Source of the DNA: Octopus bimaculoides
Lineage: Eukaryota
Length of the DNA: 64,000 nucleotides
Assembly: GCF_001194135.2 (NCBI RefSeq)
Contig: NC_069008.1
Span: 15,217,667-15,281,666 of the forward strand
Direction: 5' to 3'
Shown: positions 1 through 50,442 of the stretch, piece after piece
How the letters are laid out: every line of letters begins with the position of its first letter
Numbering within the stretch: position 1 is the first letter of the stretch
Notes under the pieces: model-generated
What the model was told of the DNA's origin: nothing
What the model saw: the letters and a program-made list of their open reading frames with translations, nothing else
Databases searched by the model: none
Translations under genes and position numbers: made by a program

Positions 1-269
1 TACTTTGAGAGAATGATTTACCACATATATCACAGGGATATGGCTTCTCTCCTGTATGAATACGTCTGTGAGCAGTTAAAGGACTACTTTTAAAGAATGA
101 TTTACCACAGATATAACTTCTCTCCTGTATGAATACGTTTGTGTACAGCTAGGTTACTTTTTTGAGAGAAACATCTTTTACAGACATCACAGTTATATGA
201 AGACTTTCTTATCTCTTTTATCATCTCTTCATGAGAAATCAATTCTTCAACCTTCTCACTCTTTTCCAT
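1..269 (-). pseudogene. ZNF-1: 5' part of a C2H2 zinc-finger gene, frameshifted after finger 1 and running off the window start
   Basis: ATG at 269 gives [24 protein letters not shown] plus one finger. An 11-bp deletion between two TATC repeats then gives HTGEKLYLW*; finger-coding DNA continues out of frame to position 1. Confidence 0.8.
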
Positions 270-1076
270 TATTTTTCCCCTCAAATCACAATGTATATAT
301 AATGTTCTTGTTTTCCTTCTTGCAGCTGACTCTTTACAAAGAATATGCTTTGTACATCATTTTCTTTCAGATGATAAATATTGAGGATGTATCTTCAGTT
401 ATCCCAATGTCATATGATATTCTGAAATAATAAAGAAACATCAGTGTAAAATATGGAGGCTACTTAAAAAATACAGATTCAAAAGTGTTTTACACTTACT
501 GTACTTTTATTATTATTATTTTTTTTTTTTGCTCGGGTCAAACACTGAAGTTTAACATCGTAATCTACGCCGTTTTAAAGGTATATAAATAAAATTTCAT
601 TAAAAGATATCCATTTTCCTAAAAATTACGAGGGAAAAAATTGGATCCTGTGAATTTTCCTAAAGTCCTCTCCCCTCTTTGGAGCAAATTTTTGTTTTCA
701 TATTTCTTTAATACACATTTTTTTCACATCTATTACACTTTTCTGTTTTCGTCACCGTGAGTTAAAGTAAACATTAACCGCCATCTCTTTGCCATAGCTA
801 GAAATAGCAGCTAAATCTGGCAGAAATCATGGATATCTCTCATCCATAAAAGATGCGGGAGACAGAAACAATCGACACGTCAAAAACCGAACGTCTACAG
901 AATTAAAAGATTAAATGTTTTCATTGTTTAATACTTACGGAAATGTTTCATAAAAGAAAGAATAGTTATAAAGTGTGTGAATTATGTGTATTGAGAAAAG
1001 TATCAAAAGTGTTTGTAGAAGTTAATTGAAACAAATTCCTGCTCGAATTATACTTCTATCAAAGTGAAGGTAAAAA

Positions 1077-1101
1077 CGGAAGTACAATTATTGCCCATAG
1101 G
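1077..1101 (-). promoter_or_regulatory. ZNF-1 promoter: ETS site plus degenerate NRF1-type site
   Basis: CGGAAGT-acaattatt-GCCCATAGG on +; exon-1 donor GTAAGT on - at 938-933; coding-exon acceptor AG at 423-422. Confidence 0.6.
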
Positions 1102-1149
1102 TATCGTTAAATAAAACACATACGGGAGATAACTCTTGTCGCAATGTTT

Positions 1150-2670
1150 CAATTTAATGCAATTGTTTTTCCTATCTGCTCGTATTTGGGAGATTCTTTC
1201 ATTTATTCTCTGCATTTTCATAATAGCACTTCCAGGTCTCTTTCTTTTCAGAAGCACTGAGTGCAAACATGCCACTATCCTACACACATTTCTCCCCCAG
1301 AACTCAATGTTCTCTGGTACACTGCCTCACAAACCAGAACACTTTAGGCCTTCAGTCCTTGTATAATAGAACATTGGCAAACCTCTCTCTGAATCTTCCT
1401 CATCACTTAATGACTATCTTCCATACTGGCATAGGTTGAATGGTTTGACAGGACTTGGCAAACCAAAGAACTGCACCAAACTCTGTTGTCAGTTTTAGCA
1501 TTGTTTCTACAGATGGACGGCCTTCCTTAAACCAACCACTTTACAAAATGTACTGGGTATTCTTTATATGGAACAACATTTGTGCTTTCAGCATGACACC
1601 AGAATCAGTGGGTTCATCAAGTAGCTTGTAAGAAAAAACAACCCTTGGATGGGAGAGGGAATGATATCGAGGTGGCTTTGTGCTAGTTGAAAGGTTAAAG
1701 TATAACAGAGTGATAGAGATAGGTGCCATACTACGGAGGAAATAGTCAGCTACTCCAGTAGGAAAAGGGAAGACAGCAAGGAGAGAAAGACAGAAACAGA
1801 TGGTACTGGAAGTGCACCAGGAGCTACACACAGGAGATAGTGGGGGAATGTGAGCAATACTGGGGGGTGGGGGTAGAGGTGAATATTTCAAGAGGATTGA
1901 AGATGTTTAGAGATAAAGAGGAGGTGACTGTAGCAAGTGACAGTGAGAGAAGTAGCCTTGCCCCAGCCAATGGCAGGTCTGAGAGGACATGGAAAATGTA
2001 TGGGTAGGCATATGAAAGAGAGTGGCAGAGGCTGCAGCAGGTGGGGATCATGGGTGGATGAAGGGGGAATGTTGAAAAGATAGGTTGTGAGAGATTTTTG
2101 ACAGAGGGAGGGATACGGCATGGCTGTAAAGGACATACTTGTATATATGGCCACAATTTGGCTTAGATTGTGTTTTCAAGCACAATAAATCACCAGATGT
2201 CTTGGTCCCTTGTTGTCTCTTCTGTGTGGCTCAAAATCTGAAGATAATTTCTCACATCTTCCTGGGTCTACCTCATGCAAAAATTCTCTCCATAATTAGA
2301 TAGGCATTTCTTTATACAGCTGCTCTTCTCCATATGCATCACATCATCATACCAATAGTCTTCGATCTTCTACACCAAGCAGGGTCATTTTCCTAAAGGA
2401 TTGGTAATTTATTTGCTTTCCTAATTCATTAGGATTTAGGTCTTTGCTAAAATAATTATAAGGCCCTTTGACTTTAGACCTCTCTAAATTTATTAGAGAT
2501 TGTGCTATAACAAATTCATCAGCAAAGAGGAGCCTCAAAAGGCAACCGGTCTTCAATTCCTCTAATATGTCCTTGAGGATCAGGATAAACAAGAGTGGGT
2601 TGAAAACCAATCCATGGTGAACTCTTAGCTGCACACTAAATTCATTGCTGTACTCATAGCCAATTTTCAT
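1150..2670 (-). mobile_element. Degraded RTE-clade LINE fragments
   Basis: ORF 2347-2670 reads as decayed RT (VHHGLVFNPLLFILIL...LLFADEFVI, compare GVHQGSVLSPLLF...LYADD). 1150-1400 matches the RT N-terminal relic at 17400-17600. Confidence 0.65.
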
Positions 2671-47223: not shown

Positions 47224-47974
47224 ACTGATATCCGGTTAAATGTCCAGTGAATGAATTTCTTTTAATCAGCTGATTATAATACGAACCTACAACGCATTTT
47301 TCAACTGCCAGACACACACATATATAATAACAACACTAGCCTTTGTGAAACATTTCTGTAAGTGATAAGCAATGAAAGTATTCATTGCTTTTAATTCTGT
47401 AGACGTTCGCTCTTTGGCGCGACGATTCTTTGTGTCTTTTCTATTTTATGAATGAGAGATGTCCTTGATTTGTGCAGGATTTGGCTGCTATTTCTAACTA
47501 TGAAAGAGAGATGTCTATGATTTGTGCGAGATTTGGCTGCCATTTCTAGCTGTGGACGTCTACACTCTCCGTCGTTACCACTTCAGATTGCTGTGTGTTT
47601 TAGTTTAAGAAATATTCTGAAATGTTCAGAAACCGATACATTTTTTTATTTTTTTATATAATTTATGGAATCTTTGTTTCTTTGTATAACTACCGATTTG
47701 TGCCCATTCCATTAGCAGTTTGTTTCCTCATAACTTTCTCCAAAATGGATAATTTTAAATAAAAATTACTGAAAGTACGTTTCAGATGATGTAGATGAGG
47801 ATTTTGTAGGAATTTTTGGTGAAAAAAAAACAAGGTACGATTGAATGGTGATTATGGATAATTTATACACGTCGACTTCTTCGTACTTGTGGATTTAAAA
47901 TTATGATGAAAAATAAGGCGGAGTGTCGCATCCACATCTAAATTGGATATTATCCATGTTGAGGGGAATTTTTT

Positions 47975-48141
47975 GGCACTACTTAAATACAGAGGTCCCG
48001 ATTCAGCATGTAACGTTATGAAAGGGAAGGTTAGGGTTACGATGTCGTTGCACGTCCACACAGCTTACATTTAAAATGTTTTGTACGTAACACCTGTATT
48101 TAAGTAGTTCTGTTAAGGGACCTCTGTATTTAAGTAGTATC
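47975..48141. mobile_element. Small MITE in ZNF-10 intron 1
   Basis: Perfect 22-bp inverted repeat ACTACTTAAATACAGAGGTCCC at 47978-47999 and 48117-48138; flanks AATTTTTT / GATTTTTT. Confidence 0.7.
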
Positions 48142-48942
48142 GATTTTTTTTTTCAAATTATCTTCACCACGCATTTGAAAATGATGTGGGTGGCGAAGCC
48201 TTTTATAAAAAGTTAAGAAAATCTGATTTCTACCCGCTTTTACGACACCGAACACTATTACAATTTTTGAGTAACATGTAACCGTCGTAAGAGGATGAAA
48301 GTAAATGGATATTGCAGTACACTTGGCCATTTTTATGAGGAATGGGCCACAAGTACTTTTCACCACCAGAGAGATGAGTCTTAACGCTTCTGCTGCAGAG
48401 TGCAGGTTTTCTTGAGTACAACGAGGTGCCAGGCATCTCAGTCTTTGTCATATCACCTGGAAAGTTCAGCATCCTGAGTTTGCTCTTCAGCACTTCATAC
48501 CCTGTCTTCCAGGATGTCCCACTTCCACATGTTCCATCTACTTTTTAGAGATTAGCACTTCTTTATGTAGCTGTGAGACATACAGCTCAGTTGTTAGGGT
48601 ATATCTTTAATTCTACAGATTATCTCAATAGAAACGAATCTGTATGTTTTAAGTAGCCTCCACATCTTACACTGTTGTTTTTCTATAATTTCAGAACATC
48701 AGATGACACTGACATAACAGAAGAAACCTCCTCAATATCTACCATGTTTTAAGGAATAAAAGAAAATATTATATGAAACAGATGTATAACATTGTTTCTA
48801 CAAATCTGGTAGAATTCCTGTGAAACGTTTGCTAGACAAAAGTAGCAATGGACAGAAATGCAGCAGTAGAAGTATTTGTGAGTAATAAAGTATAAAAACA
48901 AAAGCAAGAAGAATATATCAACTGTGATTTGAGAGGAAAATA

Positions 48943-50442
48943 ATGGAAAAGAGTGAGAAGATTATAGAATTGATTTCCCCTGAACACATGATAAAACAGA
49001 GGAGATCATATGACTGTGATATCTGTACAAAGTCCTTCTCTCAAAAAAGTGACCTAATTATACACAAACGTAGTCATACTGGAGAGAAACCATATCATTG
49101 TGATGTCTGTGGTAAATCATTCTCTGACAGTAGTAATTTAACTGCACACAAACGCACCCATACAGAAAAGAAACTACATCATTGTGATATTTGTGGTAAA
49201 TCATTCTCTAACATTAGTCACTTAACTGCACATAAGCGTATTCATACAGGAGAGAAGCCATATCATTGTAATATTTGTGGTAAATCATTTTCTATAAGTA
49301 GTCATGTTACTGCACACAAACGTACTCATACAGGAGAGAAACCCTATCATTGTGATATTTGTGGTAAATCATTCTCTGGAAACACTGCCTTAACAAAACA
49401 CAATCGTATTCATACAGGAGAGAGACCATATCATTGTGATATCTGTGATAAATCATTCTCTCAAAGTATTCATTTAACTACACATAAACGTATTCATACA
49501 GGAGAGAAACCATATCATTGTGATATCTGTGGTAAATCATTCATTGCAAATAATTACTTAACTAGGCACCAACGTATTCATACAGGAGAGAAACCATATG
49601 ACTGTGATGTCTGTGGTAAATCATTCTCTTATAGTTCTGGCTTAACTAAACACAAAAGTATTCATACAGGAGAGAAGCTATATCACTGTGATGTCTGTGG
49701 TAAATCATTCTCTCAAAGATCTCACTTAACTAGACACAAACATATTCATACAGGAGAGAAACCATATCATTGTGATATTTGTGGTAAATCATTCACTGAA
49801 AATAGTTACTTAGTTATACACAAACGTATTCATACAGGGGAGAGGCCATACCACTGTGATATCTGTGGTAAATCTTTCTCTGAAAATTCTGCCTTAACTA
49901 ATCACAAACGTATTCATACGGGAGAAGAACCTTATCATTGTGATATCTGTGGTAAATCATTCTCTCGAAGCAGTAATATAGCTAGACACAAACGTATTCA
50001 TACAGGAGAGAGGCCATACGAATGTGATATCTGTGGTAGATCATTCAATGAAAATCGTGATTTAACTAGGCACAAACATATTCATTCAAGAGAGAAATCA
50101 TATAACTGTGATGTCTGTGGTAAATCATTCTCTAACCGTAATGCCTTGACTTCACACAAGCGTATTCATGCAAAGGAAATGCCATATCCCTGTGATATCT
50201 GTAGTAAATCATTTTTTGAAAGGGGTCACTTAATTGCACACAAGCGTGTTCATACAGGAGAGAAACCATATTGTGATATTTGTGGTAAAGCATTGACTCA
50301 TAATTATCAGTTGAGTAGGCATAAACGTATTCATACAGGAGAGAAACCATATCACTGTGATGTCTGTGGTAAATCATTCTCTCAAAATAGTGACTTAATG
50401 AAACACAAATATATTCATACAGAAGAGAAAGGAAAAGGATAG
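48943..50442 (+). CDS. ZNF-10: C2H2 protein, 499 aa, 17 fingers
   Basis: Intact ORF; acceptor at 48693-48694; one linker is one residue short before finger 16. Confidence 0.92.

What the first reader, a model, noticed from the sequence alone, without database searches (positions are those of the whole stretch)
1..50442. KRAB-less tandem ZNF cluster with a shared effector-like peptide and shared promoter: candidate cephalopod analogue of the KRAB-ZFP system
Ten paralogs plus relics keep the scaffold constant (promoter, splice sites, leader peptide, finger 1 type), while the DNA-contacting helix residues differ between almost every finger and gene. They sit among TEs of many classes and ages. 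Rapid birth, death and finger turnover with a constant N-terminus parallels vertebrate KRAB-ZFP clusters that track transposons. The C2H2 expansion in octopus is established; a common corepressor-recruiting module and TE targets are my inference.
Basis: partly seen in the sequence, partly recalled or inferred. Interest (0 to 1): 0.75.

Follow-up and report, generated by a model that had tools for sequence, protein, structure and literature searches.

The report
Octopus KRAB-less zinc-finger gene cluster
This is a real tandem cluster of ten related octopus zinc-finger genes, three of them dead, that share a short N-terminal peptide and a conserved 5' DNA block while their DNA-reading residues diverge fast; this kind of cluster and the transposon arms-race idea are already published, and the peptide's proposed silencing role is untested.

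Summary
The window comes from Octopus bimaculoides (GCA_001194135.2, chromosome CM046628.1). It holds ten loci of one poly-C2H2 zinc-finger family.

- **State of the loci:** six have intact ORFs (G3, G5, G6, G7, G8, G9). G4 is intact only after an assembly artefact is collapsed. G1, G2 and a 5' relic at 36.4 kb are dead.
- **Shared 5' block:** all ten share about 300-480 nt, with a consensus 3'-splice-site-like element, a uORF-rich leader region, a conserved ATG context and a 22-aa peptide ([22 protein letters not shown]).
- **No effector domain:** Pfam finds no KRAB, SCAN, BTB or ZAD. In-frame stops upstream of every ATG rule out an effector exon spliced on there.
- **Contact residues:** helix positions -1, +3 and +6 carry 3.1-3.2 bits of entropy. 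Their dN/dS is about 1.4-1.5, against 0.24 for the finger scaffold.
- **The peptide:** it is under purifying selection (omega about 0.35), but AlphaFold2 predicts disorder and nothing known resembles it.
- **Not supported:** a shared promoter is not shown, and recent births are not seen (all paralogs have dS about 0.4).
- **Supported:** gene death and finger turnover are clear.
- **Prior work:** transposon targeting by octopus ZNFs was already predicted by Wells et al. 2023. The closest precedent for the peptide is the 28-aa FiNZ sequence of cyprinid fish.

The parts
1..269 (-). G1: ATG at 269, leader and finger 1. The array runs off the window start. It is a pseudogene.
   Evidence: The full locus in L004 shows a frameshift directly after finger 1 and damaged fingers 2-4.
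270..487 (-). G1 5' cassette. The acceptor-like AG ends at 422, and the 5'UTR-like stretch is 152 nt.
   Evidence: It is about 85-86% identical to the G2, G3 and G5 cassettes.
3165..4240 (-). G2 pseudogene: leader followed by about 11 fingers spread over three frames, with stops.
4241..4581 (-). G2 5' cassette. The acceptor-like AG ends at 4403.
7354..8442 (-). G3: intact 362-aa ORF with leader and 12 fingers. Fingers 2/4 and 5/11 are recent internal duplicates.
   Evidence: The product is identical to an NCBI-annotated protein.
7044..7353 (-). Degenerate, frame-shifted finger relics downstream of the G3 stop codon.
8443..8824 (-). G3 5' cassette. The acceptor-like AG ends at 8604, and the 5'UTR-like stretch is 161 nt.
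12180..14010 (-). G4. Positions 13033-13822 (the gap plus a duplicated 371 nt) are an assembly artefact. The collapsed ORF is 346 aa, with a 16-aa in-frame deletion of the leader's C-terminal half and the Cys pair of finger 1.
   Evidence: The public annotation gives 469 aa, which includes the duplicated fingers.
14011..14390 (-). G4 5' cassette. The acceptor-like AG ends at 14172.
18857..19954 (-). G5: 365-aa ORF with leader and 12 fingers, ended by a nonsense codon inside finger 13.
19955..20329 (-). G5 5' cassette. The acceptor-like AG ends at 20114.
24008..25348 (-). G6: intact 446-aa ORF with leader and 15 fingers.
25349..25816 (-). G6 5' cassette. The acceptor-like AG ends at 25704, and the 5'UTR-like stretch is 355 nt, including the insert specific to subfamily B.
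29938..30283 (+). G7 5' cassette. The acceptor-like AG ends at 30015.
30284..31606 (+). G7: intact 440-aa ORF with leader and 15 fingers.
   Evidence: The product is identical to an NCBI-annotated protein.
36409..36900 (+). Relic: a 5' cassette (acceptor-like AG ends at 36469) with a degraded leader and finger 1, then truncated.
42752..44092 (-). G8: intact 446-aa ORF with leader and 15 fingers.
42640..42702 (-). Out-of-frame relic of G8's former last finger.
44093..44509 (-). G8 5' cassette. The acceptor-like (TAG) site ends at 44438.
48584..48942 (+). G9 5' cassette. The acceptor-like AG ends at 48694, and the 5'UTR-like stretch is 248 nt.
48943..50442 (+). G9: intact 499-aa ORF with leader (2 aa shorter than the others) and 17 fingers.
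   Evidence: The product is identical to an NCBI-annotated protein.
2350..2739 (-). Reverse-transcriptase-like ORF fragment, a weak match.
   Evidence: RVT_1, E 0.043.
50452..50814 (+). Mariner/Mos1 transposase HTH fragment, directly 3' of G9.
   Evidence: HTH_48, E 1e-8.

Best explanation
This is a birth-and-death tandem cluster of one lineage-specific, KRAB-less poly-C2H2 zinc-finger family in Octopus bimaculoides.

**Gene anatomy.** Each gene is a single coding exon. It is preceded by a conserved 5' cassette made of four parts:
- about 120-140 nt that look like the 3' end of a 5'-UTR intron, with a branch-site-like motif, a polypyrimidine tract and an invariant AG;
- a 150-355-nt 5'UTR-like stretch that is rich in uORFs;
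- a conserved AAAATAATGG start context;
- a 22-aa mixed-charge leader peptide.

**Protein.** The protein is only the leader plus 11-17 canonical fingers.

**Shown here.**
- The finger scaffold and the leader are under purifying selection.
- The DNA-contacting positions -1, +3 and +6 change at or above the synonymous rate.
- Arrays gain fingers by internal duplication and lose them by frameshift or nonsense mutation.
- Three of the ten loci are dead.
- Within subfamily A (G1-G5) the 5' cassette is 90-100% identical, while the fingers and flanks are only 70-83% identical. The cassette is therefore kept uniform either by gene conversion or by nucleotide-level constraint.

**Inferred.**
- The proteins are sequence-specific DNA binders with diverging specificities.
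- They most likely act as repressors or regulators directed largely at repeated DNA, as published predictions for octopus ZNFs suggest.
- The leader is at most a short linear motif, not a folded effector domain. Its partner, if it has one, is unknown.
For: - **Source and gene models:** searches give the source assembly, and the annotated products equal ORFs G3, G7 and G9.
- **Arrays and periodicity:**
- **Domains:** Pfam finds only C2H2 families.
- **5' cassette:** the alignment and identity profiles are. The acceptor motif is present at 10 of 10 loci against about 0 expected. It is also present upstream of the O. sinensis paralog XP_036366877.1.
- **No upstream coding exon:** there are at least 2 in-frame stops between the acceptor-like site and the ATG at all 9 loci examined.
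- **Contact residues:** the entropy profile is. With the pooled dS (0.53), all-versus-all per-column dN exceeds dS only at -1 (1.09), +3 (0.92), +6 (1.29) and marginally +2 (0.58).
- **Bootstrapped gene pairs:** omega_contact is 1.36 [1.01-1.83], 1.52 [1.27-1.84] and 1.45 [1.14-1.91]. omega_scaffold is 0.23-0.25.
- **Leader:** pN is 0.15 against pS 0.43, with Fisher p = 5e-4 and 2.5e-3 for two pairings.
- **Pseudogenes and truncations:**
- **Recent finger duplicates:** G3 fingers are 95-96% identical, and the O. sinensis paralog has four near-identical fingers.
- **Literature:** octopus ZNF motifs are predicted to be enriched in TEs (PMC10547256). The arms-race reading is discussed in PMC12988792.
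Against: - No binding, expression or repression data exist for these genes.
- When only the synonymous sites of the contact codons themselves are used, omega is about 0.9-1.2. Neutral drift of the contact residues is therefore not excluded.
- Finger pairs were matched by minimum distance and may not be orthologous. NG86 with Jukes-Cantor correction is crude for AT-rich, partly converted repeats.
- The leader is predicted disordered (pLDDT below 50 for residues 1-21), and G4 tolerates losing half of it.
- Holzinger et al. 2025 (PMC12513265) link the expanded cephalopod C2H2 genes to nervous-system co-expression modules rather than to TE control.
- The splice-acceptor reading of the cassette rests on sequence alone. 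The many uATGs would be unusual in a translated 5' UTR.
Confidence: 0.6

Rival explanations
1. The 22-aa leader is a common corepressor-recruiting module, a cephalopod counterpart of KRAB or FiNZ. The cluster tracks transposons in an arms race and silences them through that module.
For: - The leader is conserved across both subfamilies and in O. sinensis and is under purifying selection.
- It is rich in Glu and Lys, loosely like the Glu-rich 28-aa FiNZ (PMC10547256).
- It is the only non-finger part of the protein.
- Contact residues have omega at or above 1.
- Repeats are abundant around the genes.
Against: - The leader is predicted disordered and matches no known domain or motif.
- The leader's dN (about 0.2) is twice the scaffold dN.
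- G4 keeps an ORF without half of the leader.
- The conservation peak lies in the non-coding acceptor region and the ATG context, not in the peptide.
- There are no recent births matching recent TE bursts, since dS is about 0.4 for all pairs.
Confidence: 0.15
2. The genes are diversifying transcription factors for neural or developmental gene regulation, not TE control. The leader serves a housekeeping role such as nuclear import, stability or translation start context.
For: - Expanded cephalopod C2H2 genes are expressed mainly in nervous tissue and fall into distinct co-expression modules (PMC12513265).
- Scaffold and ORF maintenance show that the proteins are used.
- The strongly conserved 5' cassette suggests shared regulation.
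Against: - Near-neutral or positive change at contact residues, 30% dead loci and 3' truncations are unusual for factors embedded in conserved developmental networks.
- Predicted octopus ZNF motifs are enriched in TEs (PMC10547256).
- Neural expression does not separate the two readings (PMC12988792).
Confidence: 0.2
3. The cluster is largely decaying. The apparent diversification is relaxed constraint, and the uniform 5' cassette is only a gene-conversion tract with no function of its own.
For: - Three of ten loci are dead, one is damaged and three are 3'-truncated.
- omega at contact codons is about 1 when their own dS is used.
- Synonymous sites of the leader are also conserved within subfamily A (pS 0.12 against 0.3-0.47 in the fingers). 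This points to conversion rather than protein-level selection there.
Against: - Six ORFs of 362-499 codons remain open in AT-rich DNA.
- Scaffold omega is 0.23-0.25, with narrow bootstrap intervals.
- Leader omega is about 0.33 in subfamily B, where no conversion signal is seen.
- The Cys/His ligands are invariant in 96 fingers.
- The cassette is also conserved in a dispersed O. sinensis paralog.
Confidence: 0.05

Closest known systems
Octopus C2H2 ZNF expansion (Albertin et al. 2015, from my own knowledge and as cited in PMC12988792; Holzinger et al. 2025, PMC12513265)
   Same: The window is from the same organism, and this is a piece of that expansion. It shows multi-finger genes in tandem clusters, lineage-specific duplication and embedding in repeat-rich DNA.
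   Different: Neither of the two cephalopod papers I searched for these terms (PMC12513265, PMC12988792) describes a shared N-terminal leader, and the 5' cassette is not something I have seen described for these genes. That is a detail added here, for one cluster only.
Vertebrate KRAB-ZFP clusters
   Same: - Tandem clusters and a birth-and-death pattern.
- A finger array in one exon.
- A conserved scaffold with hypervariable positions -1, +3 and +6.
- Finger gain and loss.
- A constant N-terminus.
   Different: - There is no KRAB domain (Pfam).
- There is no separate effector exon. In-frame stops upstream exclude one at this acceptor.
- The constant N-terminus is 22 aa and disordered, against about 75 aa folded for KRAB.
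- The KRAB cofactor TRIM28 is reported absent from zebrafish (PMC10547256). Its status in molluscs was not checked here.
- No TE binding has been shown.
FiNZ-ZNFs of cyprinid fish (Wells et al. 2023, PMC10547256)
   Same: - A KRAB-less, lineage-specific and massively duplicated ZNF family.
- It is defined by a short N-terminal sequence (28 aa) with no similarity to known domains, rich in Glu.
- Its mechanism is unknown.
   Different: - No sequence homology can be claimed; only a compositional resemblance is seen.
- FiNZ is encoded by its own exon, whereas here the leader sits in the finger exon.
- FiNZ-ZNFs have knock-down evidence for TE repression, and this family has none.
SNAG-domain zinc-finger repressors (Snail, Gfi1, Insm1)
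   Same: A roughly 20-aa N-terminal linear motif in front of C2H2 fingers acts as the repressor module. This shows that a peptide of this size can be an effector.
   Different: The SNAG consensus (MPRSFLVKK, from my own knowledge) is not present. The leader starts MEKSEK and is of mixed charge.

Membership tests
KRAB-ZFP | KRAB domain (PF01352) N-terminal to the fingers | tested here: not met
   hmmscan of G3, G6 and G9 against Pfam finds only C2H2-type families. The protein starts 22 aa before finger 1.
KRAB-ZFP | Tandem array of canonical C2H2 fingers with TGEKP linkers, encoded in one exon | tested here: met
   There are 11-17 fingers per gene at an 84-nt period.
KRAB-ZFP | Excess non-synonymous change at DNA-contact residues | tested here: inconclusive
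   omega_contact is 1.36-1.52 with intervals above 1 against pooled dS, but about 0.9-1.2 against the contact codons' own dS. The excess over the scaffold is 5-6 fold.
KRAB-ZFP | Recruitment of TRIM28/SETDB1 and binding to transposons | not testable with these tools
   This needs binding and interaction experiments.
FiNZ-ZNF | The 28-aa FiNZ consensus, encoded by a separate first exon, in cyprinid fish | tested here: not met
   The organism is different. The leader lies in the same exon as the fingers. The published morpholino target implies that FiNZ starts MAFIKEE (my own back-translation of the oligonucleotide sequence in PMC10547256), whereas this leader starts MEKSEK. No alignment with a FiNZ profile was run.
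Octopus lineage-specific C2H2 expansion | Multi-C2H2 genes in tandem clusters in an octopus genome | tested here: met
   The window maps to O. bimaculoides GCA_001194135.2, CM046628.1. It holds ten paralogous loci in 52 kb. A paralog with the same leader exists in O. sinensis.
SCAN / BTB / ZAD zinc-finger families | The respective N-terminal domain | tested here: not met
   No such Pfam hit was found at E <= 0.01.
SNAG-domain repressors | N-terminal MPRSFLV-type motif | tested here: not met
   The leader sequences do not contain it.

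The most novel reading that the evidence does not exclude
The 22-aa MEKSEK...MIKE leader, together with its conserved 5' cassette, defines a large cephalopod ZNF subfamily in the way FiNZ defines cyprinid ZNFs. The leader would be a short linear motif that recruits a silencing complex to transposons, giving a third independent invention of a ZNF-plus-effector TE-control system.
Probability: 0.12. Interest if true: 0.65.

Novelty: new member of a known kind. Interest (0 to 1): 0.35.

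Why it matters
Octopus genomes carry one of the largest C2H2 expansions outside vertebrates, and how these KRAB-less proteins act is an open question. This cluster gives a concrete, testable handle.
- The proteins consist only of fingers plus a 22-aa selected peptide, so any effector function must lie in that peptide, in the fingers themselves, or nowhere.
- The near-uniform start region could be targeted by one reagent for group knock-down, as was done for FiNZ genes in zebrafish.

The general ideas (expansion, clusters, a TE arms race) are already published, so this adds a useful detail rather than a discovery.

Tried and rejected
1. **Finding relatives by word-indexed protein search.** This failed. 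Two profile queries of the N-terminus found 16-18 candidates and no hits, even when the N-terminus of the O. sinensis paralog itself was in the query. The full-length G6 query returned only vertebrate ZNFs.
2. **The exhaustive profile search.** Multi-finger proteins swamped it. Only one of the 150 listed hits (P0167) carries the leader, so the family-wide spread of the leader remains unknown.
3. **Pairing fingers between genes by scaffold distance.** Rejected. Scaffold codons are so uniform (down to 1.6% distance between non-orthologous fingers) that they carry no orthology signal.
4. **A short 5'-UTR intron bounded by the CAG|GTAAAT donor-like site about 115 nt upstream.** Rejected as a general feature. 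The donor is absent in G7, G8 and the O. sinensis paralog.
5. **A TATA/Inr core-promoter reading of the conserved block.** Considered, but the TATA-like run lies about 52 nt from the CAG, which fits poorly. It is kept as a minority reading.
6. **CtBP-type PxDLS reading of 'PEDMI'.** Rejected, because the Pro is His in subfamily A.
7. **Other searches with no result.** Rfam and tRNA scans for SINE heads found nothing. A PDB search with the leader found nothing.
8. **Albertin et al. 2015.** The paper could not be read in the held library.

Full report
**Source and gaps**

The window is AT-rich eukaryotic DNA with eight runs of N. Exact-product look-ups place it in Octopus bimaculoides assembly GCA_001194135.2, chromosome CM046628.1, with window base 1 at about 15,217,667. 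ORFs G3 (362 aa), G7 (440 aa) and G9 (499 aa) are identical to annotated products.

Only one gap lies inside a gene: 13033-13451, in G4.
- The 371 nt on its left (12662-13032) are 100% identical to the 371 nt on its right (13452-13822). This is the signature of two contig ends that overlap but were not merged.
- Removing 13033-13822 gives a clean in-frame ORF of 346 aa.
- The public annotation gives 469 aa, so it keeps the four duplicated fingers.

Gap 26881-26890 is also flanked by a repeated sequence and sits in a 52-bp minisatellite. The other gaps in the finding's range are intergenic.

**What is there**

A regex scan and Tandem Repeats Finder show nine arrays of canonical C2H2 fingers with an 84-nt period. 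A 24-nt motif from the shared upstream block (TTTCTTTATTATTTCAGAATATCA) occurs nine times at up to 3 mismatches, against 0.00 expected. One of these is a tenth locus at 36409-36900 that retains only the upstream block, a degraded leader and a degraded finger 1. G9's copy is more diverged and is seen in the alignment.

| Locus | State |
|---|---|
| G3, G5, G6, G7, G8, G9 | Open from the conserved ATG to a stop (362-499 codons) |
| G4 | Open after the collapse, but has lost 16 aa: the second half of the leader and the Cys pair of finger 1 |
| G1 | Frameshift directly after finger 1; fingers 2-4 damaged (seen after fetching the flank beyond the window) |
| G2 | At least three frameshifts plus stops |
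| Relic at 36.4 kb | 5' fragment only |

G3, G5 and G8 have each lost their last fingers to a frameshift or nonsense mutation, and the relic fingers are still readable downstream.

No further array lies between G9 and the window end. None lies in the 1.8 kb beyond G1's last finger.

**Protein anatomy**

Pfam finds only C2H2-type families in G3, G6 and G9. There is no KRAB, SCAN, BTB or ZAD.

The proteins begin with a 22-aa peptide directly followed by finger 1. Its consensus is [22 protein letters not shown], followed by (L)SYDC at the start of finger 1.

Between the acceptor-like site and the ATG, every one of nine loci has at least two stop codons in the frame of the ATG. No upstream coding exon can be joined in frame through that site. 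This agrees with the annotated products and with the O. sinensis relative, which also starts MEKSEK. The leader is therefore the only non-finger part apart from a few C-terminal residues.

AlphaFold2, run on a shallow alignment of six paralogs, gives pLDDT below 50 and no secondary structure for residues 1-21. Fingers 1 and 2 fold as expected. A PDB sequence search with the leader finds nothing.

**The constant 5' cassette**

Aligning 800-900 nt upstream of the nine genes shows a block shared by all of them. It starts about 120-140 nt before a sequence that is a textbook 3' splice site:
- a YTNAY branch-site-like motif;
- a pyrimidine tract in which most substitutions are T/C exchanges;
- an invariant AG.

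The block continues through a 150-355-nt stretch with 2-7 upstream ATGs to a conserved AAAATAATGG start context.

Conservation peaks at the acceptor and the 40 nt after it: 0.97-0.98 identity within subfamily A (G1-G5), 0.74-0.82 within subfamily B (G6-G9), and 0.81-0.86 between A and B. It peaks again at the ATG context (0.96, 0.85 and 0.89). The leader itself is lower, at about 0.70-0.77 between subfamilies.

The same block lies upstream of the O. sinensis paralog. Upstream of the block, the A and B subfamilies are not alignable.

A donor-like CAG|GTAAAT about 115 nt upstream is present in G2-G5 but absent in G7, G8 and the O. sinensis copy. Exon 1 and the promoter therefore remain unlocated. 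I rate the splice-acceptor reading at about 70%. A promoter reading is the alternative, and the many uATGs are a point in its favour.

Within subfamily A, the cassette from about -280 to +80 relative to the ATG is 0.9-1.0 identical. The fingers immediately downstream are 0.70-0.85 identical, and the flanks further upstream are about 0.5-0.9 and mostly below 0.8. Synonymous sites of the leader are also conserved there (pS 0.12, against dS 0.3-0.47 in the fingers). The uniformity is therefore at the nucleotide level, from gene conversion or a DNA/RNA-level constraint. It is not only protein-level selection.

**Selection**

Across 96 fingers from the seven open genes, amino-acid entropy is as follows:

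| Finger position | Entropy (bits) |
|---|---|
| -1 | 3.16 |
| +3 | 3.13 |
| +6 | 3.18 |
| +2 | 2.37 |
| All other columns | below 1.9 |
| Four zinc ligands | 0 |

In all-against-all Nei-Gojobori counts, dN exceeds the pooled dS (0.53) only at -1 (1.09), +3 (0.92) and +6 (1.29), and marginally at +2 (0.58). By class, omega is 1.19 for the contact positions, 0.58 for the other helix positions and 0.26 for the scaffold.

For three alternative sets of disjoint gene pairs, aligned finger by finger, bootstrapping over fingers gives the following:
- contact dN 0.54-0.70;
- scaffold dN 0.10-0.11;
- dS 0.40-0.46;
- omega_contact 1.36 [1.01-1.83], 1.52 [1.27-1.84] and 1.45 [1.14-1.91];
- omega_scaffold 0.23-0.25.

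Proof of positive selection is weaker, for three reasons:
- With the contact codons' own synonymous sites, omega is about 0.9-1.2.
- The finger pairing may not be orthologous.
- Scaffold synonymous sites may be homogenised, since scaffold distances as low as 1.6% occur between non-orthologous fingers.

The leader is under purifying selection. For independent gene pairs, pN is 0.15-0.17 against pS 0.42-0.43, with one-sided Fisher p = 5e-4 and 2.5e-3.

**Tempo**

Every gene pair, within or between subfamilies, has dS of about 0.4-0.46 and about 80% nucleotide identity in the arrays. Fingers are as different within genes as between them (77% in both cases). No young duplicate pair exists, so 'rapid birth' is not seen in this window.

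Finger turnover and gene death are seen:
- two pairs of 95-96% identical fingers inside G3;
- four near-identical fingers in the O. sinensis paralog;
- 3' truncations and three dead loci.

Whole-unit tandem duplication is visible from homologous intergenic segments and 3' flanks.

**Transposons**

Protein-level TE relics are as follows:
- a weak RVT_1 fragment at 2350-2739 (E 0.04);
- a Mos1-type HTH_48 at 50452-50814, directly 3' of G9 (E 1e-8);
- a pogo-type DDE_1 at 59182-59496 (E 1e-13).

The last two lie outside the finding's coordinates.

Non-coding interspersed repeats in both orientations, at 67-98% identity, are common between the genes. Several recur at 83-92% identity in an unrelated O. 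sinensis locus, which shows that they are genome-wide repeat families. 'Among TEs of several kinds and ages' is acceptable. 'Many classes' is only weakly documented inside the cluster.

**Relatives and literature**

The exhaustive profile search found one protein with the leader at its N-terminus among the 150 listed. It is XP_036366877.1 of O. sinensis, named 'RE1-silencing transcription factor-like'. Its locus also holds a second family member with a G9-type leader. The family-wide spread of the leader could not be measured.

- Wells et al. 2023 already predicted binding motifs for all octopus ZNF ORFs and found them enriched in TE consensus sequences. The same paper describes FiNZ, a 28-aa Glu-rich N-terminal sequence that marks a KRAB-less ZNF family in cyprinid fish which represses TEs (PMC10547256).
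- A 2026 essay discusses the arms-race reading for octopus explicitly (PMC12988792).
- Holzinger et al. 2025 stress nervous-system expression, and call the arms-race question open (PMC12513265).
- Neither of the two cephalopod papers searched for these terms (PMC12513265, PMC12988792) mentions a shared N-terminal leader in cephalopod ZNFs.

**Verdict**

For that element, the evidence here is mixed:
- In favour: the leader is selected, and it is the only non-finger part of the protein.
- Against: it is short and predicted disordered, it resembles no known motif, and it is partly dispensable for keeping an ORF.

I file the cluster as a new member of a known kind, with modest interest.

Noticed in passing
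window 12662-13822 (G4): The gap at 13033-13451 is flanked by 371-nt perfect direct copies, an unmerged assembly overlap. The public annotation of this gene (469 aa) therefore carries four duplicated fingers. The collapsed ORF is 346 aa.
   Followed up: yes
window 6581-6839 vs 920-1178; 45453-45590 vs 53418-53555: Segments directly next to gaps are 98.5% and 97.8% identical to segments elsewhere in the window, while the homologous copies in other units are only about 70% identical. This may be a mis-join or a very recent conversion.
   Followed up: no
5'UTR-like regions, e.g. window 8595-8581 (-), 25695-25681 (-), 48703-48717 (+): A 4-codon upstream ORF (MTLG*, with variants MTVG*, MTLA* and MTLT*) starts 8 nt after the acceptor-like AG, in the most conserved part of the cassette. 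It is kept in 6 of 9 loci; G5 keeps the ATG but has lost the stop, G8 has a diverged longer version, and G7 and the O. sinensis paralog have lost the ATG. Each 5'UTR-like region has 2-7 uATGs.
   Followed up: partly
window 25349-25700, 30016-30283, 44093-44437, 48695-48942; L001 9720-9960: Subfamily B (G6-G9) and the O. sinensis paralog carry about 90-190 nt more between the acceptor-like site and the ATG than subfamily A does. This is probably a deletion in the ancestor of A.
   Followed up: no
window 26717-27160, 27738-27921, 28789-29066, 47447-47548, 52476-52575: A 52-bp minisatellite recurs at five places in both orientations, apparently as the internal repeat of an interspersed element.
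   Followed up: no
window 50452-50814 and 58270-59496: A Mos1/mariner HTH_48 fragment lies directly 3' of G9. There is also a broken pogo/Tigger-like transposase with weak HTH matches and a clear DDE_1 match. Both are outside the cluster proper.
   Followed up: partly
window 54114-54653 (-): A 179-aa Cys-rich ORF has no Pfam match at E <= 0.1. It may be a transposase-like relic.
   Followed up: no
window about 2670 downwards (L004 15773-21089): The public annotation has a 625-aa model that starts in the reverse-transcriptase-like ORF and runs across the frameshifted G1. This is probably a chimeric prediction.
   Followed up: partly
window 29587-29924 and 33487-33789: Copies of the sequence that forms the 3' flank of G2, G4 and G5 occur without an adjacent finger array, one of them inverted just upstream of G7. 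They are either orphan 3' flanks left by rearrangement or an interspersed repeat.
   Followed up: no
window 55575-55701 and 63789-64000: Two very young tandem repeats are present: a 40-bp unit in 3.2 copies at 98% and a 60-bp unit in 3.5 copies at 99%. The second is cut by the window end.
   Followed up: no
tool behaviour: The word-indexed protein search did not return XP_036366877.1 even when that protein's own N-terminus was part of the query. 'No hit' from that tool says nothing about how widespread the leader is.
   Followed up: yes
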